From Vitrella brassicaformis CCMP3155 (lineage: Eukaryota; Protista; Chromerida): a stretch of DNA of 64,000 nucleotides. The notes below the pieces were generated by a model that saw only the letters and a list, made by a program, of their open reading frames with translations, was not told the DNA's origin and searched no databases. The stretch is taken from NCBI GenBank assembly GCA_001179505.1, contig CDMY01000269.1, positions 77,815-141,814 of the forward strand, read 5' to 3'. Of this stretch, positions 1,296-63,519 are shown piece after piece (the stretch's first letter is position 1; every line of letters starts with the position of its first letter). Made by a program: the position numbers and the translations under genes.

Positions 1296-1951
1296 GCGGG
1301 TCTGTGTGTGGCTGTGCGCCGAAATCGGTAGTGTCTTGCGACATGCTCAAAAAGGTGGCGGTTTGTCAGAACCGCTCAGTTTGCTGTGGACAGCACATGC
1401 CACCAGCCCTGAACCGTATTGACATGTCAGTACAAGCCACGTCAACGAGTGTGTTAAGGTCATTGCAATCCGTACACACACGTCACGAGAGAGATGCGTC
1501 CACATGAATGATTCCGATCATCGATGTGTCTTGAGCTCCTCTCACCCACACACCACACCACACCTACACGTGCCCTGAGTGTGTCCCACCTGCCTGTGTG
1601 TGTTTCCATCTGTCTGTGCCTGCGTCTGTCTGTCAGTCAGTCTCTTCTCCCTCACATGATGGCAAAAGGCGAGACAGCACATCCACACAGCCACAGACAG
1701 AGAGAGAGAGAGAGAGGCGGGGTCTGTCTGTCTGTCTGTCTTGTCTTCTCACGCACACACACATGCAGACTGGATCGATCGTCGGATGGACGGGATGCGA
1801 TTGATGCGACGCCGACGGACGGGCGGATGAACAGAATCTCACCTGCACACCCAACACACAGACAGCGATGGATGGATGGATGGGATGTGTCTGCCCTCCC
1901 TCTCTGCTGACGTACTCATTCGTACTGTCTGTGTCTTGTTTGTGTGTGGTC

Positions 1952-13437: not shown

Positions 13438-13737
13438 NNNNNNNNNNNNNNNNNNNNNNNNNNNNNNNNNNNNNNNNNNNNNNNNNNNNNNNNNNNNNNN
13501 NNNNNNNNNNNNNNNNNNNNNNNNNNNNNNNNNNNNNNNNNNNNNNNNNNNNNNNNNNNNNNNNNNNNNNNNNNNNNNNNNNNNNNNNNNNNNNNNNNNN
13601 NNNNNNNNNNNNNNNNNNNNNNNNNNNNNNNNNNNNNNNNNNNNNNNNNNNNNNNNNNNNNNNNNNNNNNNNNNNNNNNNNNNNNNNNNNNNNNNNNNNN
13701 NNNNNNNNNNNNNNNNNNNNNNNNNNNNNNNNNNNNN
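13438..13737. other. Assembly gap (others at 18571-18870, 40740-41039, 53110-53409 and about 60020-60320)
   Basis: Runs of about 300 N; the uniform size suggests placeholders. Four of the five lie in or beside the AP2 arrays. Confidence 0.98.
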
Positions 13738-16167: not shown

Positions 16168-18570
16168 TCATTGGTCTTGTCGGCTGATGGTGCGGCGGAT
16201 GAGCGATTTGATGACCAAGTCGAATATGCCCCCGAAGACGGCCTTTCGGGCCGCGTCGATGAGTGCCGCCTCCACTCGCCCCTCATCAGACCCATCGCTG
16301 TCTTGGGGCGGCTCCACCAGCAGTGACATGCTCATGCCTGCTATGCTATACTGCACACACAGCACAGACATTGACATGTGCTCTATGTGTTGCGTGTGGA
16401 CTGACCTCTTTGATTTTGTCGATGGCGTGTTGCAGTTTGCCGCCGTGCCGCTCTTTCTTGTCGGCCGCCATGACGCCCATCTCACGCTCGATGGCCGACG
16501 CCAAACGAGCTGAGTCCCACGACTGACTTGGAGCCAAGCCTCCCTCACCCCTCACACCATCATCGCCAGAACCAGGTGGCAACTGGACGGCCGCCCGCCG
16601 CTTGAGTGCCCGCAGGAAGCGCCGCAGCTGCACTATGATGACGAGTGCGATGCCCTTTGGGAGGCCGAGGTCACGGCCGATGTCCTCACCCGCCGCCACA
16701 CTGTCGATGTCATCCAACATGTCCAGCAAACTCACCGCTGTGCCGATATCCAATGCCTGCACACACAGAAGAGAAGACGACACACATACATATAACTCAG
16801 CCTGCCCTCACATGTGTCTGTGTGGTGTGCTGACCATGATGTTGTCGGCTAAGTGTCGCATGTCGGGTGATGGGTGGGCCTTGAGCAGCTCCACCAACTG
16901 AACCTTCGTCAGCTCGTCAAACGGAATCATCTCGCCCTCCCTCTCGCCATCCCCGTCACCACGTCCAGCGTCCCGTCGTCCGTGCGTCGCCCCGTCCACC
17001 ATGCGAAGGGCAGCGGCCGGATCTCGTGCATCGGGCGTCACATCAGGGGTGTGCGGGCCATTGGCTGGCGAGAGGGACTGCGTCTGCGGGACCACATCGG
17101 CCGCGTCTCGACTCATGGGCTGCGGACGTGACAGTGGCTGCGGCACATTGGGCGTCTGTTGGCCACTCGGCAGCTGCTCGTCATCTGCCGCCTTGAGCGG
17201 CTCGAACATTGCTGGTGTGGGGTGCTGGTGACCGCGGTGGTGGTCGAGGTCTCTGACGAATCGCTTGGCCGCCTCCTTGATGTCCTCGCCGTCACGCTGC
17301 CCCACCATGGCCGGAAGCTCATGGCGCACAAACGAGTCGATGGACGCAAAACTCAGAGCTGGGGCGGCCGCCAGCATCGCCCCAATGTTGTGACCCACTT
17401 GACTGTACAGGCGACAGAGGGCCATCCGCTGGGCGTGTGTCATGGGCTGCTGGTCGTCAATGCCGTCAATGTCCATCTCCTGCTGGCGGCATGCCCAAGC
17501 GGCATCGATGGCCGCCCCCATGGCCTCCCTGGTGGCCGCTGAGAGGGGCACCGACTGCACTGGGGTGCCAGGCAGGACCACCTCGACGGCCAGCTGGGTC
17601 AGGGCAGACCCACTCCTGAACCGCAGACAGAGAGGCGTGTCGGGATGGGCTCGGCCGAGTGCCTCCAGCTGCTGGTAGAAGTGGCGAATCAGATGCCCCC
17701 TCTGCACCGGGGACACACGAGTGGCCGTGCGATGCTCCCGCAGCCCACCAGGTGGGCCCTCCCGCAGCCAACTGGGGGCCTCGATGTCCCCCGGCGAGGG
17801 ATTGCACTCGAATCGGTCGTCTCTGCGGGGCCGCGGTCGGTGGGTGTCACGGCAAGCCGAAGGGTGCAGGGGCACACCGCCCCCCACACCACCGTCACGC
17901 AGCTGAGGGGTCTGTCGCTGTTTGGCGGGCAGAGGAGGATCGTCGCCATCGTCGGCACTTCTCCAGTCAGCCGGGTCGCCATGCCTCTTGGCCCCTCCCT
18001 CTGACGTGTGCAATCGCTCCATCTTCTGTCTGTGTGCGATGGCGGCGTCTTTGGCCTCCTCGAAGCCAAGCTGCTTGACGGAGAAGGACTTGTACCTCCT
18101 GCTGTCGCCCACCTGCCAGTCGGCCTGCCATGCGTTGACTTTCTTGTGGTAGCTGACGCCCTTGACGCCGCTCTGATGTTCCAATCGCTCCCGGACTGTG
18201 GCCTGCCCTGTGCGCTCCATCTCACGACGATGCTGCTCGGCCAACGCCTGAAGGCAAGGGAGAGAGAAGGGAAGCGAATGGTCCATAAGCACCTTTGCTT
18301 AAGGCCGTGTAGGTCTCGCGCACCTTTGCTTTGTCGAAGCCGTGCTCTCGGACTGTGAAGAGCTTTTTCTTCTGCGTGGTGTCATCCTTCGCATACCATG
18401 TCGACCTCCACGCCCGGGCCCTCGCATCCCAGGAGACGCCCACGACCGTTGACTGATGCTCGGCACCTTTGCGGATGGCGGCCGTCTTGCCCTTGGTGGC
18501 CTCGGCTGCATTGCCGGCCTTTCGTCTCTGTCGCCTCTCGACGGTAGATGGGCTGCTGCTGGCGGATGGG
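16168..18570 (-). CDS. 3' portion of a multi-AP2 gene: one AP2 pair, HFYQQ unit, SAM-like domain, terminal exon
   Basis: AP2 pair at 18017-18458 (HQSTVVGVSWDARARAWRSTWY...HGFDKAK | ...HQSGVKGVSYHKKVNAWQADW...FSVKQLGFEEAKDAAIAHR); long ORF 16808-18292; 5' side lost in the gap. Confidence 0.85.
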
Positions 18571-18870
18571 NNNNNNNNNNNNNNNNNNNNNNNNNNNNNN
18601 NNNNNNNNNNNNNNNNNNNNNNNNNNNNNNNNNNNNNNNNNNNNNNNNNNNNNNNNNNNNNNNNNNNNNNNNNNNNNNNNNNNNNNNNNNNNNNNNNNNN
18701 NNNNNNNNNNNNNNNNNNNNNNNNNNNNNNNNNNNNNNNNNNNNNNNNNNNNNNNNNNNNNNNNNNNNNNNNNNNNNNNNNNNNNNNNNNNNNNNNNNNN
18801 NNNNNNNNNNNNNNNNNNNNNNNNNNNNNNNNNNNNNNNNNNNNNNNNNNNNNNNNNNNNNNNNNNNNNN

Positions 18871-21800
18871 CGGCATCGATGGCCGCCCCCATGGCCTCCC
18901 TGGTGGCCGCTGAGAGGGGCACCGACTGCACTGGGGTGCCAGGCAGGACCACCTCGACGGCCAGCTGTGGCAGGGCAGACCCACTCCTGAAGCGCAGACA
19001 AAGGGGGGCGTGTCGGGATGGGCTCGGCCGAGTGCCTCCAGCTGCTGGTAGAAGTGGCGAATCAGATGCCCCTGCTGCACCGGCGTCACACGAGGGCCGC
19101 GACTGGCCGTGCGATTCGTCGGCGGCTCAGGCAGAGCGTCTTGCTGCAGCCGACTGAGGGTGTCGCTCTTGAGCATAGGATTGCGGTCGAGTCGGTCGTC
19201 TCTGCGGCGCCGTGGCTTGGTGTCACGGCGAGCCGTAGGGTGCAGAGGCACACCGCCCCCTACACCACCTTGACGCAGCTGAGGCGCCTGTCGCTGTTTG
19301 CCGGGCAGAGGATCGTCGCCATCGTCGGCACTTCTCGAGTCTGCCGGGTCGCCATCCAGCATCGCCGCTCGCTCGGACGTGTGGGACTGCCTCTTCAAGA
19401 TGGCCCGTAGGTGGCTGATGGCGGCCTCCTTAGCACCCCGTAGCCCAGCTGCTTGACGGAGAAGGACTTGCTCTTCCTCCTGCCGCCCACCTGCCAGCGG
19501 GCTTCCCATGCGTTTTTCGTCTTGTCGAACCTCACGCCCCTGACGCCGCTCTGGTGCTTAGATCTCTGCTTTATTGCCGCTTGGCCAGTGCGGTCCATCT
19601 CGAGACGGTGCTGCTCGGCCAACGCCTGACGCACATTTGAGAAAAAATAGAGGATAAGATGGAGGCAGGGTGCTGGAATGCGATGTCGGTACCTTTGCTT
19701 TGTCGAAGCCATGGTCCTTGACATAGAAGGTCTTGAGCTCCTCGTTGCCGCTGCTCTTCTCGTACCACTTCGCTTTCCACGACTGCTCCCTTGCATACCA
19801 CGAGACGCCCGACACGTGCGACTGGTGTTCGGCAGCCTTTCGTGTGACGGCCTCGCCCTCATCCCTGGCTGTCTTGTTGGCCTGTGGCCTCGGCTTCCCC
19901 TCGATGGATGGTTTGCTGCTGCTGGACAGAGCCGTATCTCTGCGGCGGTGCTTTCGAGAGGGGCTGTGGTCGGCCGACTCGTCACGCAGCGAACCCTCTG
20001 GCCGCACCGAACCACTCCCCTCCTGCTGCCGGTCGAGCCATGAGAGGTCGATGACGCTCGCATGGTCGCCGAGTTTGTCACGGTGGATGGTGTTGCGGTA
20101 CGCCACACATTGGCGGAGAGCCTCGATGATGCTGTCACGGGAGTCAGGGGCGTCGATGACGAACTTGCGGAAGCCCAGGTGCTTGCCCTGGCTGTCAAAG
20201 TACGCGGCGAAACGTCTCGGTGAAGTCATACAGACGCCGAATCTGACGAGACGCCAAAGATAGGATGCAAAAATATGTCGCTCCCCCTTGTCGTGTGTGT
20301 TGCTCACCCTCCATTGGCGGGCGGACAGGCGTCGTTGAACCGTCGTACCAGTCGGTTCACCAGGGCCGTGGCGAGAACAGGTCCAGTCAGCCCATCCACG
20401 TCGGCCTCATCGTGCGCCCCCTTGCGGTCGACAGTCTGGCGCTTGGGGGCGGGGCGACGCGGCGGGTCCCCTTGGCCTGGACGATGGGGCGATGATGATG
20501 AGATTTGCGACTCCGTCTCAGACGATAAAGACATGGCGGCCTGCCGGCTTGACTGACTCGCTTGTTGTTTGCGGCTGCGACGGCCAGGAGGAGGGCGGTC
20601 GACCTCGATGTCTCCACGGGGCTCCACCTCCTCTGACACCGCCCCTCCCTTAGGTGTGTGGCGCCCCTCCCGTCTATGTCGGGGCGGTGTCTGATGGCGG
20701 GAAGCCTCCGCTCGATCGCAACGAGCGGCAGAGTTGGGAGAGGGAGCTGGATCGTGGACGGGCTGGCCGTCGCTGCCCAAGAAGGTGTAGTGCTGCTCTT
20801 GCATGGCCTGTCTGTGTGCTATCGCGGCGTTCTTGGCGACTTCATGGCCGAGCTCTTTGACGGAGAAGGACTTGGTCCTTGTTTGGCCGCCCTCCTTCCA
20901 GGTGGCAACCCACGCGTTGTTCTTGTAGTGGACGCCCCTGACGCCGCTCTGGTGCTCCGCTCGCTTCTTGATGGCCGCCCGGCCAGTGCGCTCCATCTCG
21001 CGACGATGCTGCTCGGCCAACGCCTGCTAAAAAAAGGATCACGGACATGAGAGAGTGCGTGTGTCATGCGTTGTTCTTTCTTGCCTTCTGCACCTTTGCT
21101 TTGTCGAAACCGTGCTCGCTGACGTAGAAGTACTTGCGTTCCTCCTTGCCGCCCTCGTACCACGACGACACCCAGGCCTGTTGCTGCTCGAGCCAGCGGA
21201 CGCCCGAGACGTCTGACTGATGCTGGGCGGGCTTGGGGATGACGGTCTTGCCGCCTTGGGTGGCCTTGCGCCTCGGCTGTCCGTCGGACAAGGACATGTC
21301 ACCATGCCGATCCATGTCATCACGACCACCGGCACCGCCCCCATCCTACACCCTGCCGTGGTGCTTCGGACGCTTGGACGCCGTACCATCACTCGTGCCC
21401 TTGCCGGTTTCACGATTCTGCAGCTGTTGCTGTGGGTGCAGGTTGATCCTCTGCACGTCGATCATGATAGCACCACCACCAGGGCAGCTGTCCTGCTGAT
21501 CCAAGTGCCGAGATGACGCCATGCTGCCGCCCCGCATATCGATATCATTCTCCTGTGCAGCGGGGGGCGACGGCTGAGGGCGGGAAGCTTCGGGTCGACC
21601 GTGGCCGGCGGCAGAGTGGTGAAGAGAAGGCGGCTGATGGACGGGCTGGCTGTCGCTGCCCAAGGGGGTGGAGCGCCTTTCCTCCATAGCACGGCGGTGC
21701 GCGATCGCTGCCTGCTTGGCAGGCTCGTAGCCGAGCTCAGCGACGGAGAAGTACTTGGTCTTCGTTTTGCCCCCCACCTGCCATTTGGCCACCCAGCGCT

Positions 21801-24800
21801 TCTGTGTCTTCTCGAAGTTGACGCCCCTCACGCCGCTCTGATGCTTGGATCTCTTCTTGGTTGCCGCCTGGCCAGTGCGCTGCATCTCACGACGATGCTG
21901 CTCGGCCAACGCCTGACAGACACATGACAGGCACAACATGGTCTTGTGGTGTTGCCCTTAGCTGCACCTTTGCTGTGTCGAAGCCGTGCTCCCTGACGTA
22001 GAAGGGCTTGTACTTCCTCTTGCCGCCTTCCAACCAGTCGGCCCTCCATGTTTTTTTCGTCTCTTCGTAGGAGACGCCCGTGACGTCCGACTGATGCTCG
22101 GCAGGTTTGCGAATGACGGTGTTGCCCTTGCCGGCCTTGTGCCTGGGCTGTCCGTCACGCGAAGACACGTCATCAGCCCAATCCATGTCGTCACCGCCAC
22201 CAACACCACCCACATCCGCCCCGCCACCGTCATGATGCGTCGGACCCTTGGAGGCTGCACCAGCACTCGTGCCTTTGTCGGCGTCGTGCTTGTCCGTTGG
22301 CTGTGGGTGCAGATTGATGCGCCGCACGTCGACCATGGTTGCACCGTCGCCAGCCGTGGCGTTGCGGTGGTGGGCCGCTTGGGCGGAGGCACGCAGGATG
22401 AGACGGGATGAAGTCACGTCAGGCACACTGAAGACACGCTCGTCGTGCTTGGCCTCCCCGTCCCGTCGACAAGCCACGAAGCTGGCCTCCTCGGCGTCCC
22501 ACTCGAGACCAAAGCTGCATGGCACACATATCAAGGAAAACGATAATGAGTGGCCTATTCCTGTCTGCGGTCTGCATTCCTGCTATCCACCTGTCGGCAT
22601 CGCCTCGGTTTACGTCCGTCAGCTGTCGCCTTGCCTGCTCCACCAGGCTGGCTGCCAGAGCGTGGCCGCTCCCCTCACTCAGCTTCGCCGACACATGTCT
22701 TTCCTTCCCGCCTCCCGACCGGTCGCGACGGCGCTTGGCCCCCGGTCGATGTGGCAGCTCCTCGCCCTCACGACGGCGATGTGCCTCCGATGTGGGTCGA
22801 ATGGGAGGCGGCAGGAGTTCATCCTGACTGTCCCTCCTGCTGCCCGGGCGATGGCTGGGCTCCCCACTCTCCGGACCAAACGGGTCGGCCATCAGCCTCT
22901 CACTGACACGATGTGCGGACCGGCCTCTGTGGCGGCGCCCAGGCTGAATATGGGGCGCCATGGGGTCATTGCTGTCAGGTGTGTGGTCACTGGGGCCCTC
23001 AGATAGAGACGGGGCCGGCATGGGCTTGCGCCTCGCTCCGCTGCGGCGGCGCGTCCGAGGTCGATTGCAGCCGTCGGGGCTGATGTCATCGAGCCAGCTG
23101 ATGTCCAGGGGGACGGCGGCCTCTCCCGTACTGACAGTGCTCAGACGGCTGAGCTCCTCGACAGCGCGGCGAAAAGCGGCGACAACGGCCGAACGGGAGC
23201 TGAGGTCGACCACCGGGACATCGACAATGCGCTCAGTCGCACCCTCCCCGACAGAGGACGGCACACGGACACGGAAGCTGCCGTCCTGCCAACACAGCCC
23301 GCATGACCTGCCCGAAAGAGCCAAACCCACACACACATGCACACACGCGACAAATCTGGCCCTTCCTTGTCTTCCCTTGTCTTTCCTTACCCGTCGCTGC
23401 TTAGGACATCAACCAGCGCAGCAGCCAGGTCGCCGCCCTTCATCCCACCCATGTGTGGCCCGCAGCTGGGGGGGCCGTGGCGGCGCGCCGAGTGAATCGC
23501 ACCATCATCATTGGGGGGGCTGCAAGGACGGCCTTTATCGCTCTTCGCCCCGCCCTCTGACGTGCGGCGCTGCGACTCCAGGGCACGTCTTTCGGCGATC
23601 GCGGCACCCAGAGCACCATCATAGCCGAGCTTGTCGATGGAGAAAGACCTCCACTTCTCCTTGCCTCCCTCACGCCAGGTGGCCACCCATGAGTTGCTGC
23701 TCTCGTTGTACCTCACGCCCTTGACGTCGCTCTGGTGCTCAGATCGCTTCTTGACTGCTGCCCTCCCCGTACGCTCCATCTTGAGACGATGCTGCTCGGC
23801 CAACGCCTGATACACACAACACACATGAGAGAGATTGACGATCGCCGTTGGCGTCGCTGTTGTCAGTACCTTTGCTTTGTCGAAGCCGTGCTCCCCGACA
23901 AAGAAGTCCTTGTACTTCCTGTCCCCCTTCTCATACCACGACACTCTCCACGCCTTGTCCCTTTCCGCCCATCTGACGCCACGGACGTCTGACTGGTACC
24001 TGCCCTCCCTGGCGTTGGGCGTCGGTGCTCCGTCGTGGGCTGGGGGGCAGCTGCCGAGCGGATGTGTGTGGCGAGGCTTCGGCGATGGGCTGCGATCGAC
24101 GGCTGACTCCTCATCGGCGGGCCCTGCCGACTCGGTGACTCTCTCCCCGCTCACAGTGGACTGAGGCCGATGACCATGGCGACGTTTGGCCGACAGACCT
24201 GGAGAAAACAACACAGACAGTCACAACTGCTGGGTGAGTATCACACACAGGGTGGGTACCTTTGTGACGGCGTGGCTCGTTGTGAGGTGGCTCAGCCACC
24301 CAACCACCAGCAGCAGCAGGGGGCATACACGAGGGACCGGGTGCACCGATGGGTAGCGCGTCGGCGGCGCGGCCAGGAGCGCTGCTCGACTCTGCACACA
24401 AGAAAAAACAGCAGCACGCACACAATGATATGCATCAGAGTCCCCCAGCCTCCTGTCATCCCGACCATCTAATGGCCTGCCTCTTCGGCCCTTGGGCTCA
24501 ATGCGGGGCGGCATGGGGTCACGCTTGTCGAGTGGCGGCGGAATGGACCCGTGTCCCGCGAGAGGTGAGTTGCCATCCCCTGCTGCCCCTCGCTGCGCCT
24601 CCTCGAGCCACGAGAGGTCGATGAGCACCCCCTGGTCGCCCAGACGCGAGCTGTGCAGGGCGTTGCGATACTCGACGGCTTGGCGGAAGGCCGTCAAGAT
24701 GGCCTCACGGGAGGTGACGTCCTCGCCGACACTGAACTGGCAAAGATCGACAGTGGCCGCAGCCTGGCTGTCCCAGAAGTAGCCCTCGAACACATAGGTT

Positions 24801-27699
24801 GCCCGCCATGAGACGCCGACACTGACACACACACATATCCAGAGACGAGTCCCTCATGACATCCGTCCGTCCGTTCTTGCTGCGAGTCGTCCTCCCTCGC
24901 GTACCCTCCGTTGTTGAGGCAGAGGGAGTGGACATTTGGCTGCTCCTGACGCAGCCGCCGCATCAGTCCACGACCCAACGCGTCGCCCGTCAGCCCGCCC
25001 AGATCGCAGCGGTCAGACGCAGGCGAGAGGCCGCCATCCTCCTCGTCCATCCGCCGCTGCTTGTTTCGCTGGCTGCCATTGCGGCCCTCGTGTGAGCCAC
25101 TGCTATCGCTGCCGCTCCATGGAGGCGCCCCTCTCTCGAATGGGGAGTGCCGCTGCTCCATCAAGGCCCGTTTGTGCCGGGTGGCGGCATCCATAGCAGC
25201 CTCGTAGCCCAGCCTGGTATGCTGCCGATTGGTCTTCAGAAGCTGTTTGATGAATCGACTGGCGGCCTCCTTGATGTCCTCGCCGTCACACTGCCCCACC
25301 ATGGCCGGCAGCTCGTGACGCACAACGACTCGATGGACGCAAAACTCAGAGAGGGGACGGCAGCCAGCATCGCCCCAATGTTGTGACCCACTTGACCATA
25401 CACACGACAGAGGACCATCCGCTGGGCGTGTGTCACGGGCTGCTGGTCCTCGGTGCCGTCAATGTCCATCTCCTGCTGGCGGCATGCCCATGCCGCATCG
25501 ATGGCTGCCCCCATGGCCTCCCTGGTGGCCGCTGAGAGGGGCACCGACTGCACTGGGGTACCAGGCAGGACCACCTCGACGGCCAGCTGGGTCAGGGCAG
25601 ACCCACTCCTGAACCGCAGACAAAGGGGGGTATCGGGATGGGCTCGGCCGAGTGCCTCCAACTGCTGGTAGAAGTGGCGAATCAGATGCCCCCTCTGCAC
25701 CGGCGTCACACGAGGGCCGCGACTGGCCGTGTGATTCGTCGGCGGCGTAGCCGGTGGGCCCTCCCGCAGCCAACTGGGGGCCGGCGAGGGATTGCGGTAA
25801 AATCGGTCGTCTCTGCGGGGCCTCGGTCGGTCGGTGTCACGGCGAGCAGTAGGGTGCAGTGGCACACCGTCCCCCACACCACCGTCACGCAGTTGAGGCG
25901 CCCGTCGGTGTCTGACGGGTGGAGGATCGTCGCCATCATCGGCACTTCTTGCATCAGCCTGGTCGCCATGCCTCTCCGCCCCTCCCTCTGACGTGTCCAA
26001 TCGCCCCATCTTCTGTCCGTGTCTGATGGCGGCCTCCTTGGCACCCTCGAAGCCAAGCTGGTCGACGGAGAAGGGCTTGGTCTTCTGCTTGCCGGCCTCC
26101 TGCCAGCTGGCCACCCATGAGTTGCAGCTCTTGTGGTAGTGGACACCCCGCACGCCGCTCTGGTGTGTCCTCCTGACTGATGCCCTCCCCGTACGCTCCA
26201 TCTTGAGACGATGCTGCTCGGCCAACGCCTGAAGCCAAGACGGAATAAAAATAAGGTGTGTGGCGCCTCTCGGGTTTCTTCCCACCTTTGCTTGATCGAA
26301 TCCATGATGTTTCATGTAGAAGTACTTGTGCTTCTGCTTGCCGTCACCCTTGTCGTACCAAGTCGCCACCCAGGCCTGGTCCTTCTCAGCCCAGTGGACC
26401 CCCTGCATGGCAGACTGATGCCCCGCACGCTTGCCGATGACGGCCTTGCCCGTGCCGGCCTCGGCTGTCTTGCCGCCCTTGCGCGTTCGCGGCTCCTTCT
26501 TGGCCCACAGACCTAAGAGAAAACACCACAGGCACCCAAAATGGATGGGTGGTCGACGATAGGAATGGTGTGGCTGTCTACCTTTGTCACCGGGAGGCTC
26601 ATTGTGAGGTGGGTCAGCTGAGCCACCACCACCACCACCAGCAGCAGCGAGGGTCATGGACGAGGGACCGGGGGCACCGGCGGGCGGTGAGCCATTGACG
26701 GGGGAAGGGACGCCAATCAACTCTGCACACATGGAAAGACGAACACACACACAATGATATACGTTAAAGTCCCCAAGTCTCTCTCGTTTCTGCTCTAGCC
26801 TTACCTGCAGCAGGTTTCCACTGAGTGACGGTCCGCTCGACGCCATCGATGACATCCGACACACTCTCGAACCGATCGTCAGTGTCTGCCGTGCCGTTGC
26901 GGACGGCCACCAGCAGGTCGCTCAGCATGCTCGTGTCCCAGCCCCTCACCACATCGTCGCGAGTGAGAAGCGCCCGCACCCACAGCGGCGGCCGGTCGGT
27001 CCCTCCCCCCTCCCCCCGCCATGCCGTCACCGCATACCGCTGGCCGTCGCCCTCGTCGGCCACACTGAACTCCAAACCCTCGTACTCGGCGGAGTAGTTG
27101 CGGTGGCCGGGGGTGCCCTTGTTGTGCAACACATCCGACAAGGGGATCGGCCGGCGGCTTGACGTCCTCTCCCGGTTGGAAGTGGCTGCAGGTCCCTCAC
27201 TTGAGTGCGGCCCGCCGCCTTGCTGCTTCTTCGGGTCGCGTGGTGCGTGATGCTGGTGGGTGGGCGACGGGTGCCGTTCTGCTGTGCTGGTGTTGTCGTG
27301 TGGTGCTGGTGTGTGTCGGTCTGCGGGGGCTGGTGGCAGTGGGTAGGGGTAGGGGGATGGGTGGGGTTGGGCGTCGGTCGTCTGCAAGGGTCCTCTGTCG
27401 TCTTGGACATTCGCTGCTACACCACCCTGACGCGGCGGATTTGCTGATACACCAACACGCGGTTGGCAGCCGGCGCCAGTCGGCTGTTCAAGGCCCTCCG
27501 GGGCGGCCGAGTGGCGCCGCTGATGAGATACAGACGAGCGGTTGTCCTGACGCATCTCCCTCTCTGGTACGGCCGCGCCGGCAGCATGTGACGACGACCC
27601 ATGAGTCGCCGAGGCCGCCTGCAAGATGTCTGCCAGAGCCCGAGAGCCGTCCTCTGCTGCTGGTGAGAAGCCGGCGGGATGAGTATGTCGACTCGCCAT
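18871..27699 (-). CDS. Giant multi-AP2 gene, locus 1 (5 AP2 pairs plus degenerate AP2-like units); three apparent frameshifts, possibly a pseudogene
   Basis: ATG at 27699 (MASRHTHPAG); AP2 pairs at about 25995-26420, 23576-23998, 21682-22096, 20799-21222 and 19395-19827. The junctions I checked join in frame through GT-AG introns, apart from indels near 25325, 19438 and 18985. Confidence 0.85.
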
Positions 27700-49870: not shown

Positions 49871-51362
49871 GCGAGAGCATCTCGCTGGCCTGGCGCCTCC
49901 ACGACGGCCGTGAGGGCTCGTTGTGTTGTGATGCGATGTTGGTGTTCTGCCTGCCCTGCTTTGCCGACTGACTGACGCCGCTGTGAGTGATTTGGAGCAC
50001 ATGAAGATGTTTCCTGGCTCACACACTGCCGTGTGGGCAAGGCAATGTCCTTTATGCGGTTCATGTTGGTCACGAAGGCTGTCTGTTGAAGTAGGGTTTT
50101 GTTATTTTGTCAGCGTGCATACAACGGGAATGATTGTGAGTATCGCCGTCCTGTACATCTGTGTCTGCTGTGCTGTGTCTAACCTTCCCTCCCTCTTAAC
50201 TAGCCGAGTGTCGCCTGGCCTGTGCTGTGTGTGCATCGATGCATCGAGATGTGTGTGTGTATGTGTGTGTGTGTGTGTGTTTCTGAATAGGCCTTCCTTG
50301 ATTGACTTGACTGCCTTGTGGGTGGTAGGGCTGGGCTGCAGTGAGTGCATCCCATACACAGTACTGATGCCGTCTGGTCTGGACGGACCCAAGTAGATAG
50401 GGAGGGAAGGGAGATCTGATGGTTGTGAGGAGGCAGCTCTGAGTCGACCCTTCTGTTGATTGACCGGGGATGAATGAATGAAAGCCGTGTGCAATGCAAT
50501 GGACCGATGTGTCAGATAGATCGTATCAGGCCTCGTCCGCCGTCAGTCAGCAACAGACGCACACACACACACACACACACATCGCATGCAGTCCGTATGC
50601 TCCCCAGCAGATGAAGTCAGCAAAGAATGGCCCCACTGCAGCCCGTCTGCTATGAATGACCTAATCCACCACAGCAACCAGCGTTACCAATTCCTGTCAT
50701 CACACCACCAAGACACATACACAACGAGAGACAGAGAGCAGACACGAGACAGGGCGGCGATTGCCCGGTTTGCCCGCGATGTTTTTTGTGAGGGCATGCG
50801 CATTCGGGACGCCCTGACGGCAGTCATTGCTGAGACAGGCCAAGTGTGGGCTGAGGCCAAAGTTTTTTGCGCCTCCTTTTTCGTGAGGCGCTCTGAGCGG
50901 TTTTATTGATATGTCCATAGGTGCGACGTGTCCCGATGACGCCCTGATGTGGATAGTCACATGCAGTCAGTACATAAACCCTGACTGACAGAGAGTGCTC
51001 TTTTCTCGATGGTGACTCGATCAAAGAACCCACCCACCCATACAACGTCTACATGACGTGAATGTCTTCACAATGAAAGAGACACGTGCCACCACCAACC
51101 AACTGACACACGTGCAGCCAGACAGGGATGGCGTGGCCCACTGGACTGGACTGCGACAAGCAGCTCTTAAAAGATATGGACACACTCCATCAAGCTGGTC
51201 TGTCTGTCTGTGTCAACGAAGGCAAGAAAGGCGATCCATCTGATTGCAAAAGCGAGGGAAAAATGTCTTGCATATGGCGGAAGAATGCATGTGGACACGC
51301 TGATGAATAGATGTATTCGCCGATGTAGATGTGCAAAGGTAGGTAGATTGCTACACAAATGC

Positions 51363-54300
51363 TCATCCGTCTCGGCGGTTGATGATGCGGCGGATGAAAA
51401 ACTTGACGACTTGCAAGTCGGATATGCCCCCGAAGACGGCCTCTCGGGCCACATCGATGAGTGCCGCCTCCACCCGCACCTCATCAGATGCACCGCTGTC
51501 TTGGGGCGGCTCCACCAGCAGCGACATGCTCATGCCGGATATGCCATACTGCACACACAGCACAGACATTGACATGTGCTGTGTGTGTTGTGTGTTGACT
51601 GACCTCTTTGACTTTGTCGATGACGTGTTGCAGTTTGCCGCCGTGGCGCTGCTTCTTGTCGGCCGCCATCATGTCCATCTCACGCTCGATGGCCGAGACC
51701 AGACGACCTGAGTCCCACAGCTGACCGGCAGCCAGGCCTCCCCCACCCCTCACACCATCCCCGGGTGGCCACTGGACGGCCCCCCGCCGCTTCAGTGCCC
51801 GCAGGAAGCGCCGCAGCTGCGCTATGATGACGAGTGCGATGCCCTTTGGCAGGCCGAGGTCGCGGCCGATGTCCTCACCAGCCGCCACACTGTCGATGTC
51901 ATCCAACATGTCCAACAAACTCACTGCCGTAGTGATCTCCACCTGCACACACCGACATGACAACACACACATTCACGCAGAGTGCCTCCACTCATGTGTG
52001 TTGCTTCGCCGCTGACCATGATGTTGTCGGCAACGTGTCGCATGTCGGGTGATGGGTGGGCCTTGAGCAGCTCCACCAGCTGACCCTTCGTCAGCTCATC
52101 GAACGGAATCACAGCTCCCTCCCTCTCGCCATTGCCGTCGTCCCGTCCCCCCTCCCGTCCGTGGCCGTGCGTCGCCCCATCCGCCATGCGATCGGGCGTC
52201 TCGGCATCTCGTGTCTGTTGAGGCGCATCGGGTGCCTTGGGGACATGGACGCGCTGATAGGGTGGCGGCCGCATCGTCAGGGCGAAATCGGGCGGAATGT
52301 CGCCACTCGACAGCTTCTCGGCACCCGCCGCCTTGAGCGGCTTGGGCAGGGCTGGTCTGGGGTGCTGGTGACCGGGCTGATGAATGAATCGGTTGGCGGC
52401 CTCCTTGATGTCCTCGCCGTCACGCTGCCCCACCATGGCCGGCAGATCATGGCGCACAAACGAGTCGATGGACGCAAAGCTGAGAGCTGGGACGGCCGCC
52501 AGCATCGCCCCAATGTTGTGACCCACTTGACCAAACACACGACAGAGGACCATCCGCTGGGCGTGTGTCATGGGCTGCTGGTCCTCAGTGCCGGTGTCCA
52601 TCTCCTGCTGGCGGCATGCCCACGCGGCATCGATGGCCGCCCCCATGGCCTCCCTGGTGGCCGCTGAGAGGGGCGCAGACTGCACCGGGGTGCCCGGCAG
52701 GACCACCTCGACGGCGAGCTGGGTCAGGGCAGACCCACTCCTGAACCGCAGACAGAGAGGCGTGTCGGGATGGGCTCGGCCGAGTGCCTCCAGCTGCTGG
52801 TAGAAGTGGCGAATCAGGTCTCCCTGCTGGACCGGCGTCACACGAGGGCCGCGAGTGGGCGTGTGATGATCCTGCAGCCCACCAGGGGGGCCCTCCCGCA
52901 GTTCACTTCGGGCCTCGATGTCCGAGGGATTGCGGTCGAATCGGTCGTCTCTGGGGGGCAGCGGTCGGTTGGTGACACGGCGAGCCGTAGGGTGCAGAGG
53001 CACACCGCCCCCCACACCACCGTCACGCAGCTGAGGCGCCAGTCGCTGTCTGCCGGGCAGAGGACGTTCGTCGCCATCGTCGGCCCTTGTGGCATCAGCC
53101 TGGTCGCCANNNNNNNNNNNNNNNNNNNNNNNNNNNNNNNNNNNNNNNNNNNNNNNNNNNNNNNNNNNNNNNNNNNNNNNNNNNNNNNNNNNNNNNNNNN
53201 NNNNNNNNNNNNNNNNNNNNNNNNNNNNNNNNNNNNNNNNNNNNNNNNNNNNNNNNNNNNNNNNNNNNNNNNNNNNNNNNNNNNNNNNNNNNNNNNNNNN
53301 NNNNNNNNNNNNNNNNNNNNNNNNNNNNNNNNNNNNNNNNNNNNNNNNNNNNNNNNNNNNNNNNNNNNNNNNNNNNNNNNNNNNNNNNNNNNNNNNNNNN
53401 NNNNNNNNNACTCGACGGCTTGGCGGAAGGCCGTCAAGATGGCCTCACGGGAGGTGACGTCCTCGCCGACACCGAACTGGCGAAGATCGACAGTGGCCGC
53501 AGCCTGGCTGTCCCAGAAGTAGCCCTCGAACACATAGATTGCCCGCCAGGAGACGCCGACACTGACACACACACATATCCAGAGACGAGTCCCTCATGAC
53601 ATCCGTCCGTCCATTGTCGCTGCGAGTCGTCCTCCCTCGCTTACCCTCCGTTGTTGAGGCAGAGGGAGTGGACATTTGGCTGCTCCTGACGCAGCCGCCG
53701 CATCAGTCCACGACCCAACGCGTCGCCCGTCAGCCCGCCCAGGTCGTAGCGGTCAGGCGCAGGCGAGAGGCCGCCATCCTCCTCGTCCATCCGCCGCTGC
53801 TTGTTTCGCTGGCTGCCATTGCGGCCCTCACGTGAGCCACTGCTGTCGCTGCCGCTCCATGGAGGCGCCCCTCTCTCGAACGGGGAGTGCCGCTGCTCCA
53901 TCAAGGCCCGTTTGTGCCGGCTGGCGGCATCCATAGCAGCCTCGTAGCCCAGCCTGGTGTGATGCCGATTGGTCTTCTGAAGCTGTTTGATGAATCGACT
54001 GGCGGCCTCCTTGATGTCCTCGCCGTCACGCTGCCCCACCATGGCCGGCAGCTCACGGCGCACAAACGAGTCGATAGACGCAAAGCTCAGAGCTGGGACG
54101 GCAGCCAGCATCGCCCCAATGTTGTGACCCACTTGACTGTACACGCGGCAGAGGACCATCCGCTGGGCGTGTGTCATGGGCTGCTGGTCCTCAGTGCCGT
54201 CAATGTCCATCTCCTGCTGGCGGCATGCCCACGCGGCATCGATGGCCGCCCCCATGGCCTCCCTGGTGGCCGCTGAGAGGGGCACAGACTGCACCGGGGT

Positions 54301-57300
54301 GCCCGGCAGGACCACCTCGACGGCCAGCTGGGTCAGGGCAGACCCACTCCTGAACCGCAGGCAGAGAGGCGTGTCGGGATGGGCTCGGCCGAGTGCCTCC
54401 AGCTGCTGGTAGAAGTGGCGAATCAGGTCTCCCTGCTGGACCGGCGTCACACGAGGGCCGCGAGTGGGCGTGTGATGATCCTGCAGCCCACCAGGGGGGC
54501 CCTCCCGCAGTTCACTTCGGGCCTCGATGTCCGAGGGATTGCGGTCGAATCGGTCGTCTCTGCGGGGCAGCGGTCGGTTGGTGACACGGCGAGCCGTAGG
54601 GTGCAGAGGCACACCGCCCCCCACACCACCGTCACGCAGCTGAGGCGCCAGTCGCTGTCTGCCGGGCAGAGGACGTTCGTCGCCATCGTCGGCCCTTGTG
54701 GCATCAGCCTGGTCGCCATCCAGCACCGCCGCTCGCTCTGACGTGTCCAATCGCTCCATCTTCCGTCTGTGCGCGATGGCGGCCTTCTTAGCACCCTCGA
54801 AGCCAAGCTGCCTGACGGAGAAGGGCTTGTTCTTCTGCTTGCCGGTCTGCTGCCAGCTCGAGCGCCATGAGTTGTTTACCTTGTCGTAGCTGACGCCCTT
54901 GACGCCGCTCTGGTGTGCCGCTCTCTTCATGACTGCTGCCCTCCCCGTACGCTCCATCTCACGACGATACTGCTCGGCCAACGCCTGAAGGAAGAGCACG
55001 CGAAATGAGTGCTATTGGTCTTTGCTGTCGCTTGTGCTTTGTACCTTAGCTTTCTCGAAGCCGTGCTTCTTGACAGTGAAGTACTTGCTCCTCATCTTGG
55101 GGTCCCCCCTCTCGTACCACGATGACACCCACGCCTGAGACTTCTCATACCAGAAGACACCCGACACGTCAGATTGGTGCTCGGCAGCCCTTCGTATGCC
55201 CTGGCCGGTCTTGGTTGTCTTGCCACTGTTGGGGCTCGGCCGCCTCTCGATGGCTGATGGGCTGCTACTGCCGAGAGCCCCATCTCTCCGGCGTTGCTTG
55301 CGAGAGCGGCTGTGGTCGGATGACTCGTCACGCACCGACAGGCTCAGCTCCTCAACCCCCTGCCGCTGCCGGTTGAGCCATGAGAGGCCGATAATGGTCG
55401 CTCGGTCGCCGAGTTGGTCACGGTGGATGGTGTTGCGGTACGCCACACATTGACGGAGCGCCTCGAGGACGCAGTCACGGGAGTCGGGATCTTCGATGAC
55501 GAACTTGCGGAAGCCCAGGTGCTTGCCCTGTTTGTAGAAGTAGGCCGCGAAGCGTGTCGGTGAAGCCAAAGAGATGCCGACCCTGAGAGAGGGCACAGCC
55601 AACACAAAGGATAACGAATGTGTCGACTTCCCGTGTCCGGTGCGTTGCTGACCCTCCATTGGCGGGCGGACAGGCGTCGCTGAAGCGTCGTATCAGTCGG
55701 TTCGCTAGGGCTTTGGCGAGGGCAGTCCCAGTGAGCCCATCCAGGTCGGCCTCATCGCGCGCTCTCTTGCGGTCGACAGTCTTGCGCTTGGGGGCGGGGC
55801 GACGCGGCGACCCCCTCTCTTGGTCGCTGCGGCGACGCGTCTGACGAGTACCGGTAGGGCGCGCAGGGACAGCCAGCTGGGCATTGCTGTTGTGCGTGCA
55901 TTCGGGGCAGAACCACTTGCCCTTGGGGACGGCCGTCAGCTGGACGCAGTAGGTGTGGTAGGCCGCAGAGCAGCCCACGTTGTCACACAAGAGTAGTAGC
56001 TGCTCATCGTCGCCCTTGCCGCACTCCCAGCACCGCACCGAATCATCCGAACCACTCCCCGCCTCCTCAATGTCGTTGGTGCTCACCCTCTTGCGCCCTC
56101 GCCTGCCGCTGTGACTGGTGAACTCGGGGGGAAGGGGGCGGCGCGGCGGACTCGAGCTGCTGCTGTCGCGGTAGTCGCTGTCACCCCCCTCACCACCAGA
56201 CGACAGTGATGATGTTGAATAGCCCTGCCACTCCGACTCAGACGGTGAAGCCATGTCGGCATCGCGGCTGGCCTCACTTGACCGTGGCTTGGGGCCGCGA
56301 CGCCCGACTGAAGAGACGGACGGGGGAATGCGCCGATGGGGTGAAGAGCTCGGTTGGACATCAGACCTTTGACCCAAGTGCTGAGATGACGCCATGCTGC
56401 CGCCCCGCATATCGACGTCATTCTCCTGTGCAGCGGGGGCCGACGGCTGAGGGCGGGAAGCCTCCGCTCGACCGTGGCCGGCGGCAGAGTGGTGAGGAGA
56501 AGGTGGCTGGTGGACGGGCTGGCTGCCGCTGCCCAAGAGGGTGTAGTGCCTCTCCTCCATAGCACGGCGATGTGCGATGGCTGCCTGCTTGGCAGGCTCG
56601 TAGCCGAGCTCAGCGACGGAGAAGGACTTGGTCTTCGTTTTGCCCCCCAGCTGCCATTTGGCCGCCCAGCGCTTGAATCTCCCGTTGTAGTTGACGCCCC
56701 GCACGCCGCTCTGATGCTCAGACCTCTGCTGGACGGATGCCTGGCCGGTGCACTCCATCTCGCGACGATGGTGCTCGGCCAACTCCTGATCCATACGTTT
56801 GAGGAAATGGAGAGTGAGATAGAGGTGGGGTGCTTGAGTGAATTGTCGGTACCTTTGCTTTGTCGAATCCGTGCTCCTTGACGTAGAACTGCTTGCGCTT
56901 CTGCTTGCCGTTGTTCTTGTCGTACCACTTCGCTTGCCAGTACTGACCCTGCTCACACCAGTAGACGCCTGTCACGTCTGAGTGATGCTCGGCCCTCTGA
57001 ACGAAGGTCTTCTTCTTGCCCCGGGTGGCCCTGCGCCTCGGCTGTCCATCACGCGAAGAAACGTCATCAGCCCAATCCATGTCGTTATCGCCAGCAACAC
57101 CGCCCACATCCGCCCGGCCACCGTCATGATGTGCCGGACACTTGGAAGCCATACCACTACTCGTGCCTTTATCGGCGTCATCCTTGTCCGTCGGCTGTGG
57201 CTGCAGCTTGATGCGCCACACGTCGACCACGATTGCACCGTCGCCAGCCGTGGCGTTGCGGTGGTGCGCCGCTTGGGCGAAGGCACGCAGAATGAGCCGG

Positions 57301-62784: not shown

Positions 62785-62815
<31 letters not shown>

Positions 62816-62913
62816 ATCCTTTTGGCCAGTGGGGTGTGTGGGAATTATATTGCGTGCCTGGAGGTTTCCCGACGTCGAATCGGCTCCTCCGTAGCACACG
62901 AGCAGGGATCACC

Positions 62914-62948
<35 letters not shown>

Positions 62949-63231
62949 GTGTGTCAACGCACAGCAGTGTATGTGTGTGTGTGATTTGGTAGGTACCAGT
63001 GGGCGGCGCTGGCGGCGCTGGTGGTGACTGGACAGAGCCCAAAAGAGGCGACTGGACAGGCACAGATGAACGGTGGGCCTGATGCACCTCAGATGCTGAT
63101 TGGGCCGCGCCGGCAGCATGTGAAGACGACCCATGAGTCGCTGAGGCCGCCTGCATAGCCAGAGCCCGAAAGCTGTCCTCACCTGCCGATGCTGAGAAGC
63201 CGGCAGGAGTATGAGTGGGCTGACTGGCCAT
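51363..63231 (-). CDS. Giant multi-AP2 gene, locus 2 (4 visible AP2 pairs, degenerate AP2-like units, PHD finger, SAM-like C-terminus), interrupted by two gaps
   Basis: ATG at 63231 (MASQPTHTPAG); AP2 pairs at about 60570-60996, 58464-58896, 56555-56987 and 54754-55179; no frameshift noticed in the visible sequence. It may be more than one gene across the gaps. Confidence 0.85.
55898..56032 (-). other. PHD finger (C4HC3) inside AP2 locus 2
   Basis: CWECGKGDDEQLLLLCDNVGCSAAYHTYCVQLTAVPKGKWFCPEC, in frame with the upstream AP2 domain in ORF 55475-56956. Confidence 0.93.
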
Positions 63232-63519
63232 CGTCACTTTTGTTGCTGCCGTCGCTTCAGCTTGCTCATAGGCCCTCCCCTGGCGCCGTCATGGGCACAG
63301 ATAACGGTAGATGCGGTGTCTGACGTTGACTCGATGAAGCACGTCTGTTGAAAACCGCCAGATCTCTGCTCAATTGTAGGAGATCTGCGGAAGAGCTGGA
63401 CTCTATGCCGCTGGCGAGGTCCTAAAACGCCTCAATCACTCGGGAATTGCAAGCTTTTCTGCGAGCTCGGAAAAGGCGGAAAGAGAAGTGGATCTTTGCG
63501 ACTCTTTGCAGCAGCAGCG

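What the first reader, a model, noticed from the sequence alone, without database searches (positions are those of the whole stretch)
18017..26420. Giant poly-AP2 proteins: 20 canonical AP2 domains in 10 tandem pairs across two loci
Characterised ApiAP2 factors typically carry 1-4 AP2 domains. Locus 1 strings 5 pairs (plus 1 beyond a gap) and locus 2 at least 4 pairs into what splice as single reading frames. Each pair has a fixed grammar: type a (HQSxVxGVxW...W...WY...FxVxxHGFDKAK), an intron, a conserved linker (ALAEQHRxxMERTGxA) and type b (HQSGVxGVxY...W...FSVxxLGxxxAKxAAIAHR). The beta-strand residues that contact DNA in known AP2 structures vary from pair to pair while the scaffold is fixed. 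This resembles a diversifying, array-type DNA-recognition system analogous to zinc-finger or TALE arrays (inference). It is the best candidate here for an undescribed system.
Basis: partly seen in the sequence, partly recalled or inferred. Interest (0 to 1): 0.88.

Follow-up and report, generated by a model that had tools for sequence, protein, structure and literature searches.

The report
Broken tandem AP2-pair gene arrays in Vitrella
This alga's DNA really does carry twenty copies of a DNA-binding module, strung in ten pairs along two duplicated stretches, but a real stop signal, reading-frame breaks and uncertain assembly joins mean they are not shown to make two giant proteins, and the gene family was already known to be expanded.

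Summary
The window is the last 64 kb of Vitrella brassicaformis scaffold CDMY01000269.1. All 20 AP2 domains (10 a/b pairs, minus strand) are real. Every pair has the same phase-0 intron.

The "single reading frame" claim fails for locus 1:
- A TAG at 21346-21348 and a 1-nt frameshift inside the fifth pair's b domain are reproduced without difference in reassembled DNA contigs and in RNA-like contigs.
- A further frameshift lies at about 25323.
- The public annotation calls three abutting genes of 1849, 572 and 863 aa.

The N gap is not a trustworthy join. Its flanks are 100% identical to other contig ends, and locus 2 shows the same problem.

The RNA-like contigs are spliced at the a|b introns. 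One runs unspliced across the TAG, so the array looks like one transcription unit whose 3' cassettes are no longer translated in frame.

Paralogs elsewhere are annotated with 6-7 AP2 domains plus a PHD finger, above the "one to four" quoted in reviews. Woo et al. 2015 already reported the family expansion.

The scan noted this stretch before (s1-212041) and another giant AP2 protein in this genome (s1-246546).

The parts
16168..27699 (-). Locus 1: an array of six AP2 a/b pairs. The public annotation calls three abutting genes here: 27699-21346 (1849 aa, P0151), 21315-19395 (572 aa, P0005) and 19362-16168 (863 aa, P0159, which spans the N gap).
26833..27096 (-). The only N-terminal family domain of locus 1.
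   Evidence: (HMM built), E 1.9e-39
25980..26420 (-). Pair P1. Type-a exon 26420-26286, 57-nt intron, then a-helix plus type b 26228-25980.
25323..25326 (-). A 1-nt deletion (TT against TTT in two paralogous copies) that shifts the frame in the region after P1b. The public model bypasses it with a predicted intron. Not checked against reads.
24602..24823 (-). c unit 1 (three strands plus a long helix; divergent AP2-like fold).
23552..23998 (-). Pair P2, with a 63-nt intron.
23088..23306 (-). c unit 2.
22319..22516 (-). c unit 3.
21658..22096 (-). Pair P3, with a 55-nt intron.
21346..21348 (-). In-frame TAG that ends the annotated gene 1. It lies 30 nt upstream of the ATG of annotated gene 2. 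It is present with 0 differences in contigs of three DNA-like runs and one RNA-like run.
20775..21222 (-). Pair P4, with a 70-nt intron. It is a tandem duplicate of the P3 cassette (20681-21474 matches 21564-22345 at 74%). It sits where locus 2 has a PHD exon.
20032..20241 (-). c unit 4.
19413..19827 (-). Pair P5, with a 67-nt intron. Its b domain is cut short by the frameshift.
19436..19439 (-). G run holding a 1-nt deletion inside the helix of P5b. The correct continuation GAKEAAISHLRAIL... lies in another frame. Contigs of an RNA-like run and a DNA-like run show no indel here.
18571..18870 (.). Assembly gap (300 N placeholder). The join across it is not supported.
18871..19174 (.). Contig end, 100% identical to 13134-13437, which abuts gap 13438-13737.
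18200..18570 (.). Contig end, 100% identical to the last 371 bp of scaffold CDMY01000290.1. The gene model P0001 (1727 aa) on that scaffold ends in this sequence.
17993..18458 (-). Pair P6, with a 76-nt intron. It is followed by the terminal tail region, down to 16168.
51361..63237 (-). Locus 2: a segmental duplicate of locus 1 (about 85-91% nucleotide identity) holding four pairs, a PHD finger, two N gaps and a tail. I could not recover a public gene model for it.
60546..60996 (-). Pair Q1.
58443..58896 (-). Pair Q2.
57880..57883 (-). A 1-nt deletion (CCC against CCCC in locus 1) that shifts the frame. Not checked against reads.
56531..56987 (-). Pair Q3.
55898..56032 (-). PHD finger (PF00628, 30.1 bits against a cut-off of 24).
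54733..55179 (-). Pair Q4.
53410..53861 (.). Contig end, 100% identical over 452 bp to the other end of the same contig (59568-60019). Both ends abut gaps.

Best explanation
WHAT IT IS. This is a recently duplicated cluster of a Vitrella-specific ApiAP2 subfamily, part of the large paralogous apiAP2 expansion already reported for this alga. Its genes grow by internal duplication of one cassette. The cassette consists of a 'c' unit (a divergent AP2-like fold), a long low-complexity spacer, a type-a AP2 domain split by a phase-0 intron before its helix, a linker of about 10 residues, and a type-b AP2 domain. A single N-terminal domain sits at the 5' end of the gene and a tail region at the 3' end. 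Some members also carry a PHD finger.

THE TWO LOCI. Each of the two loci in the window began as one such gene.
- In locus 1 the array is still transcribed and spliced, at least from P3 to P5.
- Its reading frame is interrupted by a real TAG after the third pair and by a real frameshift in the fifth pair. Another frameshift after the first pair is not verified.
- As sequenced, locus 1 can therefore give at most the annotated 1849-aa, six-AP2 protein.
- The downstream cassettes are untranslated or decaying.
- The sixth pair beyond the gap may belong to another scaffold's gene.

HOW IT LIKELY WORKS (inferred).
- Each a/b pair acts like the PfSIP2 tandem AP2 module, binding a bipartite DNA site.
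- Different pairs carry different residues on the DNA-facing sheet and are tethered by long flexible spacers, so an intact family member would be a multivalent factor that reads several separate sites.
- The PHD finger would add chromatin reading.
For: IDENTITY.
- The window equals CDMY01000269.1 of GCA_001179505.1.
- Family members are all Vitrella CCMP3155 proteins.
- Woo et al. 2015 report one cluster of 50 homologous apiAP2 genes in Vitrella.

DOMAINS.
- Pfam and HMM scans find the AP2 domains.
- The AlphaFold model of a pair has pLDDT 81 and shows two beta-beta-beta-alpha folds.
- Its best solved matches are tandem-AP2 proteins, including PfSIP2 bound to DNA, 6sy0 at E 1.4e-5.

CASSETTE GRAMMAR.
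- The intron position is the same in all pairs.
- The c units form one family.
- There is one N domain per locus.
- The segmental duplication is seen.

DISRUPTIONS.
- TAG. Contigs X1 rec4, X2 rec13, X5 rec22 and X8 rec29 all show 0 differences.
- P5b frameshift. X8 rec26 has 0 differences and 0 gaps, and no indel rows are reported.
- 25323 frameshift.

TRANSCRIPTION AND SPLICING.
- X8 contigs stop at the exon borders 19627/19692, 21093 and 21912 with 6-8 unmatched letters beyond.
- X8 rec29 covers 21093-21511 unspliced, across the TAG and the annotated gene border.
- X8 depth is absent over 23671-24870, while the DNA-like runs cover that stretch.

PAST FUNCTIONAL CONSTRAINT. Away from the sheet face, AP2 positions have pN/pS of 0.35-0.5.

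STAND-ALONE PARALOG. P0002 is 2058 aa with 7 AP2 domains and a PHD finger. Its gene has no gap and is flanked by unrelated genes.
Against: - The RNA evidence comes from one run of unknown type, judged to be RNA only from its behaviour.
- The evidence is assembler contigs, not reads. Low-abundance spliced or edited isoforms would not be seen.
- The DNA runs may be the data the assembly was built from, so they exclude a consensus error but not a culture-specific mutation.
- The frameshifts at 25323 and 57880 lie in short homopolymers and were not checked against reads. They could be errors.
- Separate translation starts for the downstream fragments (the annotated 572-aa and 863-aa genes) are not excluded.
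- No DNA-binding data exist for any family member.
- The closest solved sequence relatives (T. gondii AP2IX-6 and AP2VIIb-2) are mitoribosomal scaffold proteins, not transcription factors.
Confidence: 0.65

Rival explanations
1. One reading: each locus encodes one giant protein with 10-12 AP2 domains, and the apparent breaks are sequencing errors, are removed by splicing, or are read through.
For: - All cassettes lie on one strand with no foreign gene between them.
- There is one N domain and one tail per locus.
- The annotated genes abut within 31-33 bp.
- An RNA-like contig crosses the gene1/gene2 border.
- The three frameshifts sit in short homopolymers.
Against: - The TAG and the P5b frameshift are reproduced without difference in reassembled DNA contigs and in RNA-like contigs.
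- The RNA-like contig is unspliced across the TAG.
- The gap flanks match other contig ends.
Confidence: 0.1
2. The public annotation's view: locus 1 is three independent, separately translated AP2 genes of 1849, 572 and 863 aa.
For: - The gene calls are.
- An ATG follows the TAG by 30 nt.
- AP2 positions away from the sheet face are under constraint.
Against: - There is no room for a promoter or UTR between the calls.
- Genes 2 and 3 lack the family N domain.
- Gene 2 ends in a frameshifted, truncated AP2 domain.
- Gene 3 is modelled across an N gap whose join is unsupported.
- An RNA-like contig is continuous across the first border.
Confidence: 0.15
3. Order and copy number in both loci are partly assembly artefacts. 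P6 with its tail would belong to the gene at the end of scaffold CDMY01000290.1. P5 would run straight into the tail at 13437-11878. The 6.16-kb unit 53862-60019 would be collapsed or mis-scaffolded. This is compatible with the main explanation and bears on the count of pairs per gene.
For: - There are 371-bp, 304-bp and 452-bp stretches of 100% identity, each ending exactly at a gap edge or a scaffold end.
- An orphan tail-only gene model follows gap 13438-13737.
- All gaps are 300-N placeholders.
Against: The scaffolder presumably had mate-pair links for its order. Perfect repeats of 300-450 bp can be real in a family that undergoes gene conversion.
Confidence: 0.4
4. The AP2 pairs are not DNA readers but RNA-binding or structural scaffolds, as in the Toxoplasma mitoribosome.
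For: The best solved sequence and structure matches are T. gondii mitoribosomal tandem-AP2 proteins (PMC11742926).
Against: - PHD fingers are present in the family.
- The proteins are very large, and the family has tens of fast-evolving paralogs.
- Basic residues on strand 3 are conserved.
- PfSIP2 bound to DNA is also a strong structural match.
Confidence: 0.05

Closest known systems
ApiAP2 transcription factors (Pfam PF00847), including the Vitrella paralog cluster of 50 genes reported by Woo et al. 2015 (PMC4501334)
   Same: - The AP2 domains score above the Pfam threshold.
- The alveolate lineage is the same.
- Expansion is by gene duplication.
- The window's proteins are already deposited as AP2/ERF domain-containing proteins.
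   Different: - Reviews give one to four AP2 domains per protein (PMC6631176). Here annotated paralogs have 6-7, and the genomic arrays hold 8-12.
- The architecture is a fixed c-a-b cassette with a conserved intron inside the type-a domain.
- I found no description of that architecture in the searchable papers.
PfSIP2 tandem AP2 repeat bound to two SPE2 half-sites (PDB 6sy0)
   Same: Two AP2 folds are joined by a short linker. The Foldseek match of the pair model is E 1.4e-5 over 134 columns.
   Different: - Sequence identity is only about 20%.
- PfSIP2 has one pair, whereas here the pairs are repeated many times.
- DNA binding was not tested here.
T. gondii mitoribosomal tandem-AP2 proteins (AP2IX-6 and AP2VIIb-2; PDB 9fi8, 9hqv, 9g6k, 9i05)
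   Same: These are the closest solved relatives by sequence (E 1.7e-8) and by structure (E 2.8e-8). They are also tandem AP2 proteins.
   Different: They are ribosome scaffolds of about 170-570 aa. The Vitrella proteins are 1000-2300 aa with PHD fingers and many paralogs.
C2H2 zinc-finger and TALE arrays
   Same: A small DNA-binding fold is repeated, with variable residues on the recognition surface.
   Different: - Pairs are 560-620 residues apart, not joined by short fixed linkers.
- There is no evidence of one contiguous reading head or of a per-module code.
Algal multi-AP2 genes, for example the seven-AP2 gene CsuAP2-007 of Coccomyxa subellipsoidea (PMC4982375)
   Same: A single annotated gene holds seven AP2 domains.
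   Different: - It is in the green-algal, plant-type AP2 lineage.
- No paired a/b grammar or c units are reported for it.
- I did not compare the sequences.

Membership tests
AP2 domain (PF00847) / ApiAP2 | Profile match above the curated threshold | tested here: met
   -. For example, P0151 scores 234 bits with 6 stretches, and single type-b domains score 44-56 bits against a cut-off of 33.3.
- First exons of type a alone score 30-38 bits, because their helix lies in the next exon.
AP2 domain (PF00847) / ApiAP2 | Three-stranded sheet packed on a C-terminal helix | tested here: met
   The AlphaFold model has strands 19-22, 27-34 and 40-46 followed by helix 47-68, then strands 85-88, 93-100 and 103-110 followed by helix 111-131. 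One search matches it to 6sy0 and 3igm.
AP2 domain (PF00847) / ApiAP2 | Sequence-specific DNA binding | not testable with these tools
   This needs a protein-binding microarray or DAP-seq.
PfSIP2-type tandem AP2 module | Two AP2 domains joined by a short linker in one polypeptide | tested here: met
   About 10-16 residues lie between the end of the type-a helix and the first strand of type b, in all ten pairs.
PfSIP2-type tandem AP2 module | Binding of a bipartite DNA element by the two domains | not testable with these tools
   Inference only.
Array-type DNA readers (C2H2 zinc finger, TALE) | Modules abut through short conserved linkers and form one contiguous reading head | tested here: not met
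   In P0151 the pairs start at residues 377, 1059 and 1619. The spacers hold low-complexity sequence, c units and other regions.
Array-type DNA readers (C2H2 zinc finger, TALE) | Recognition residues under diversifying selection | tested here: inconclusive
   -. Pooled pN/pS on the sheet face is 1.14 for type a and 1.51 for type b, against 0.41-0.51 for the rest.
- The counts are small, the site class was chosen after inspection, and no codon-model test was run.
Single giant gene | One uninterrupted spliced reading frame across all pairs of a locus | tested here: not met
   - TAG at 21346-21348 and frameshift at 19436-19439, both reproduced in contigs of the DNA-like and RNA-like runs.
- Frameshifts at about 25323 and 57880.
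- Unsupported gap joins.
Processed-out or decaying pseudogene (for the 3' cassettes of locus 1) | Disabling mutations | tested here: met
Processed-out or decaying pseudogene (for the 3' cassettes of locus 1) | Neutral evolution or loss of expression | tested here: inconclusive
   - The region is still transcribed and spliced in run X8.
- dN/dS between locus 1 and locus 2 is 0.35-1.23, depending on the segment.
PHD finger (PF00628) | Profile match above threshold | tested here: met
   In locus 2 the match is at 55898-56032, at 30.1 bits against a cut-off of 24. Locus 1 has none, and the P4 pair sits in the corresponding place.

The most novel reading that the evidence does not exclude
Intact members of this family would be translated as single proteins with 7-10 canonical AP2 domains plus 3-5 cryptic AP2-like c units. 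Candidates are the stand-alone P0002 and possibly the true, correctly assembled versions of these two loci. Their pairs would have been driven apart by positive selection on the DNA-facing sheet. That would give a cassette-built, multivalent DNA reader that evolves new target combinations by cassette duplication and swapping. No such mode of transcription-factor evolution has been described for ApiAP2 proteins.
Probability: 0.2. Interest if true: 0.65.

Novelty: new variant of a known kind. Interest (0 to 1): 0.42.

Why it matters
ApiAP2 factors are the main gene regulators of malaria and Toxoplasma parasites. They are usually described as carrying one to four AP2 domains.

Vitrella is a free-living relative of those parasites. 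In it, the family has grown by copying a fixed three-fold cassette inside genes, giving annotated proteins with 6-7 AP2 domains and genomic arrays of 8-12. This shows how the family can expand and shuffle DNA-binding modules, and it offers natural sets of closely related AP2 pairs for studying specificity.

It also gives two cautions:
- The largest arrays sit in the least reliable part of the assembly.
- At least one array is interrupted by real mutations, so domain counts taken from raw sequence overstate what is translated.

Tried and rejected
- I looked for a public gene model for locus 2 with three word-index searches covering lengths 271-863, 950-3022 and 1224-3895 aa. None was found, so I have no official calls there.
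No run is labelled RNA. I inferred that X8 is RNA from its behaviour.
- A single read-laying run was allowed, so the frameshifts at 25323 and 57880 and the region upstream of 24870 were not checked.
- Foldseek of the c-unit model against the PDB gave nothing significant. Only the wide VIA-align search put AP2 folds on top.
- hhalign of the N-terminal domain against AP2 and against the c units gave nothing.
- Pfam found nothing in the tail, the N domain or the c units. The 'SAM-like' note from an earlier finding therefore stays untested.
- The loose ends of contigs might have been alternative exons. All of them map to paralogous copies instead.
- tblastn 'internal stops' mostly fall in read-through of real introns and were discarded.
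- I considered a mobile-element origin for the cassette. No transposase, integrase or terminal repeats turned up in the loci, and I did not pursue it.

Full report
**Source**

Earlier notes of this scan named the genome as Vitrella. I confirmed it. The window is 100% identical to the last 64 kb of scaffold CDMY01000269.1 of assembly GCA_001179505.1 (record position = window + 77814). All close protein relatives are 'unnamed protein product [Vitrella brassicaformis CCMP3155]'.

**The observation**

- A regular-expression scan, a six-frame scan with HMMs built from the hits and Pfam agree on ten a/b pairs of AP2 domains, all on the minus strand.
- Locus 1 has six pairs: P1 to P5, and P6 beyond the gap. 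Locus 2 has four pairs: Q1 to Q4.
- Domain E-values are 1e-24 to 1e-45.
- Each pair has a phase-0 GT..AG intron of 55-76 nt at exactly the same place, after ...HGFDKAK.
- The Pfam match to the first exon of type a ends at profile position 41 of 54.
- In an AlphaFold model of a spliced pair (pLDDT 81), the segment ALAEQHR..MERTG is a helix packed after three strands.
The true linker to type b is only about 10-16 residues.
- Foldseek places the pair model next to tandem-AP2 proteins of the Toxoplasma mitoribosome and next to the PfSIP2 tandem AP2 bound to DNA (6sy0).

**The gap, tested first**

All five gaps in the window are 300-N placeholders.

- The 371 bp directly after gap 18571-18870 (window 18200-18570) are 100% identical to the last 371 bp of another scaffold, CDMY01000290.1. 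The gene model P0001 on that scaffold (1727 aa, two pairs plus a PHD finger) ends in exactly this sequence.
- The 304 bp directly before the gap (18871-19174) are 100% identical to 13134-13437, which abuts gap 13438-13737. An orphan, tail-only gene model follows that gap.
- The contig ends therefore overlap other contig ends. A natural alternative is that P5 runs into the tail at 13437-11878, while P6 and its tail continue the gene on scaffold 290.
- Continuity and frame across the gap are not supported. The public 863-aa model that bridges the gap is not trustworthy.
- Locus 2 has the same problem. Contig 53410-60019 has 452-bp ends that are identical to each other, and each end touches a gap. 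The number of pairs there is a lower bound at best.

**Is it one reading frame?**

The public annotation calls three abutting genes in locus 1:

| Gene | Window range | Protein | AP2 content |
|---|---|---|---|
| 1 | 27699-21346 | 1849 aa | six AP2 domains (P1-P3) |
| 2 | 21315-19395 | 572 aa | P4, P5 |
| 3 | 19362-16168 | 863 aa | P6, modelled across the gap |

- Genes 1 and 2 are separated by a single in-frame TAG and 30 nt. The flanking residues align with the homologous P2-to-P3 spacer.
- Genes 2 and 3 are separated by a 1-nt deletion in a G run inside the helix of P5b. The expected continuation GAKEAAISHLRAIL... lies in another frame.
- A third 1-nt deletion at about 25323 is bypassed in the public model by a predicted intron. 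Seven paralogs code straight through that region.
- Locus 2 has a 1-nt deletion at about 57880.

**Reads**

I laid contigs of four public runs on 18871-24870.

- X1, X2 and X5 behave as DNA. Their contigs run through the introns.
- X8 behaves as RNA, on four grounds. Its contigs end at the exon borders 19627/19692, 21093 and 21912 with 6-8 unmatched letters beyond. One contig carries a 65-nt intron-sized skip. Its depth is absent over 23671-24870, where the DNA-like runs are covered. Its loose ends map to paralogs.
- The TAG is present with 0 differences in X1 (20992-21530), X2, X5 and X8 (21093-21511).
- The P5b frameshift is present with 0 differences and 0 gaps in X8 (19396-19627). No indel is reported there in any run.
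- Both disruptions are therefore real in this strain's DNA and RNA.
- The RNA-like contig is unspliced across the TAG and across the annotated gene border.
- X8 depth is low (4-10) and fades towards the 5' side.

Each locus has only one N-terminal family domain. Together with the read evidence, this fits one long transcription unit whose frame is now broken. It fits less well with three independent genes, or with one giant protein.

**The family**

- Searches without a length filter and with one find at least 20 Vitrella paralogs.
- Pfam counts 6 AP2 domains in P0151 (the window's gene 1), 7 in P0152 and 7 in P0002.
- P0002 is a gene with no gap inside it, flanked by unrelated genes on the other strand. 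A stand-alone 7-AP2 plus PHD model therefore exists.
- Scaffold 290 shows another run of abutting AP2 gene calls of 2226, 440 and 1197 aa, again with gaps.
- Woo et al. 2015 reported 'one cluster of 50 homologous apiAP2 genes' in Vitrella.
- The ApiAP2 review gives 'one to four AP2 domains'.
- A seven-AP2 gene is on record for a green alga.
- I found no paper describing the cassette architecture.

**Variation**

- In codon alignments of 20 type-a and 22 type-b domains from the window and three paralogous loci, core positions hardly change.
- Alternating strand positions and loops change at 1.0-2.4 times the mean synonymous rate. Overall omega is about 0.6.
- Between counterpart pairs, pooled pN/pS is 1.14 (type a) and 1.51 (type b) on the sheet face, 0.41-0.51 for the rest of the domain, and 0.35 for the type-a helix plus linker.
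It also shows past constraint on the fold.
- The site class was chosen after inspection, and exposed helix positions vary too. It is therefore not a test of positive selection.
- Whole-segment dN/dS between the loci is 0.35-1.23.

**Why it is not a zinc-finger or TALE-like array**

Pairs are 560-620 residues apart in the annotated protein. The spacers hold low-complexity sequence and a second repeated unit. The likely mode is therefore several independent bipartite readers on a flexible chain, not one contiguous reading head.

**The c unit**

- The units between the pairs form one family: 37 copies in the family proteins (ten of them in P0007), four in locus 1 and five in locus 2.
- Their AlphaFold model is confident (pLDDT 88) and has three strands plus a long helix.
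- Foldseek finds nothing significant.
- In a search of 48,161 chains with VIA-align, the top four matches, and six of the top seven, are AP2 domains, at Z 4.6-5.8.
- hhalign aligns the c unit with AP2 in register, at P = 0.008.
- The c unit is probably a divergent AP2-like fold, so a cassette has three such folds.

**Verdict**

- The domains and their grammar are real.
- The family expansion is known, and its members are already annotated.
- Six to seven AP2 domains per annotated protein, and the c-a-b cassette, are a new variant of the ApiAP2 kind.
- The claim of two giant proteins with 20 AP2 domains is not supported by this sequence.
- The scan had noted the same stretch before (s1-212041), and another giant AP2 protein elsewhere in this genome (s1-246546).

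Noticed in passing
window 24602-24823, 23088-23306, 22319-22516, 20032-20241; 59500-59721, 57976-58194, 57216-57410, 55375-55581, 53408-53563: The repeated 'c' unit between the pairs gives a confident beta-beta-beta-alpha model. Its best matches among 48,161 PDB chains are AP2 domains (Z 4.6-5.8), although Pfam and Foldseek miss it. It is probably a cryptic, divergent AP2-like fold. The paralog P0007 has ten in a row.
   Followed up: yes
protein P0016 (CEM33424.1, another Vitrella scaffold): This 667-aa protein has six Pfam AP2 domains spaced only 65-120 residues apart (starts at 202, 282, 348, 467, 536 and 601). That is a much denser, truly array-like AP2 protein than those in this window.
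   Followed up: partly
window 53410-53861 and 59568-60019: The two ends of one contig are 452 bp of perfect identity, and each touches an N gap. This looks like a collapsed or looped repeat of a 6.16-kb unit in the assembly graph.
   Followed up: partly
window 11878-13437: A third copy of the family's tail region, with no AP2 domains, is annotated as an orphan 362-aa gene directly after gap 13438-13737. Its first 304 bp equal the end of the P5 contig.
   Followed up: partly
AP2 exons of P1-P5 against Q1-Q4: Synonymous divergence inside the AP2 exons (pooled pS 0.36-0.38) is higher than in most flanking coding segments of the same duplicated loci (dS 0.05-0.25). This hints at gene conversion of the flanks, or at exchange of AP2 exons with other paralogs.
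   Followed up: no
window 20465-21496 against 55810-56369: Locus 2 has a PHD-finger exon here. At the same place locus 1 has an extra AP2 pair (P4), made by tandem duplication of the P3 cassette. The TAG lies inside that duplicated segment.
   Followed up: partly
runs X6, X12-X15: Marine sediment metagenomes from 2023-2025 hold up to 45% of the sampled 31-mers of window 20300-24300. DNA nearly identical to Vitrella is therefore present in those samples.
   Followed up: no
type-b domains, e.g. P0151:436-498: The closest solved sequence relatives are Toxoplasma AP2IX-6 and AP2VIIb-2. Both are components of the mitochondrial ribosome rather than transcription factors.
   Followed up: partly
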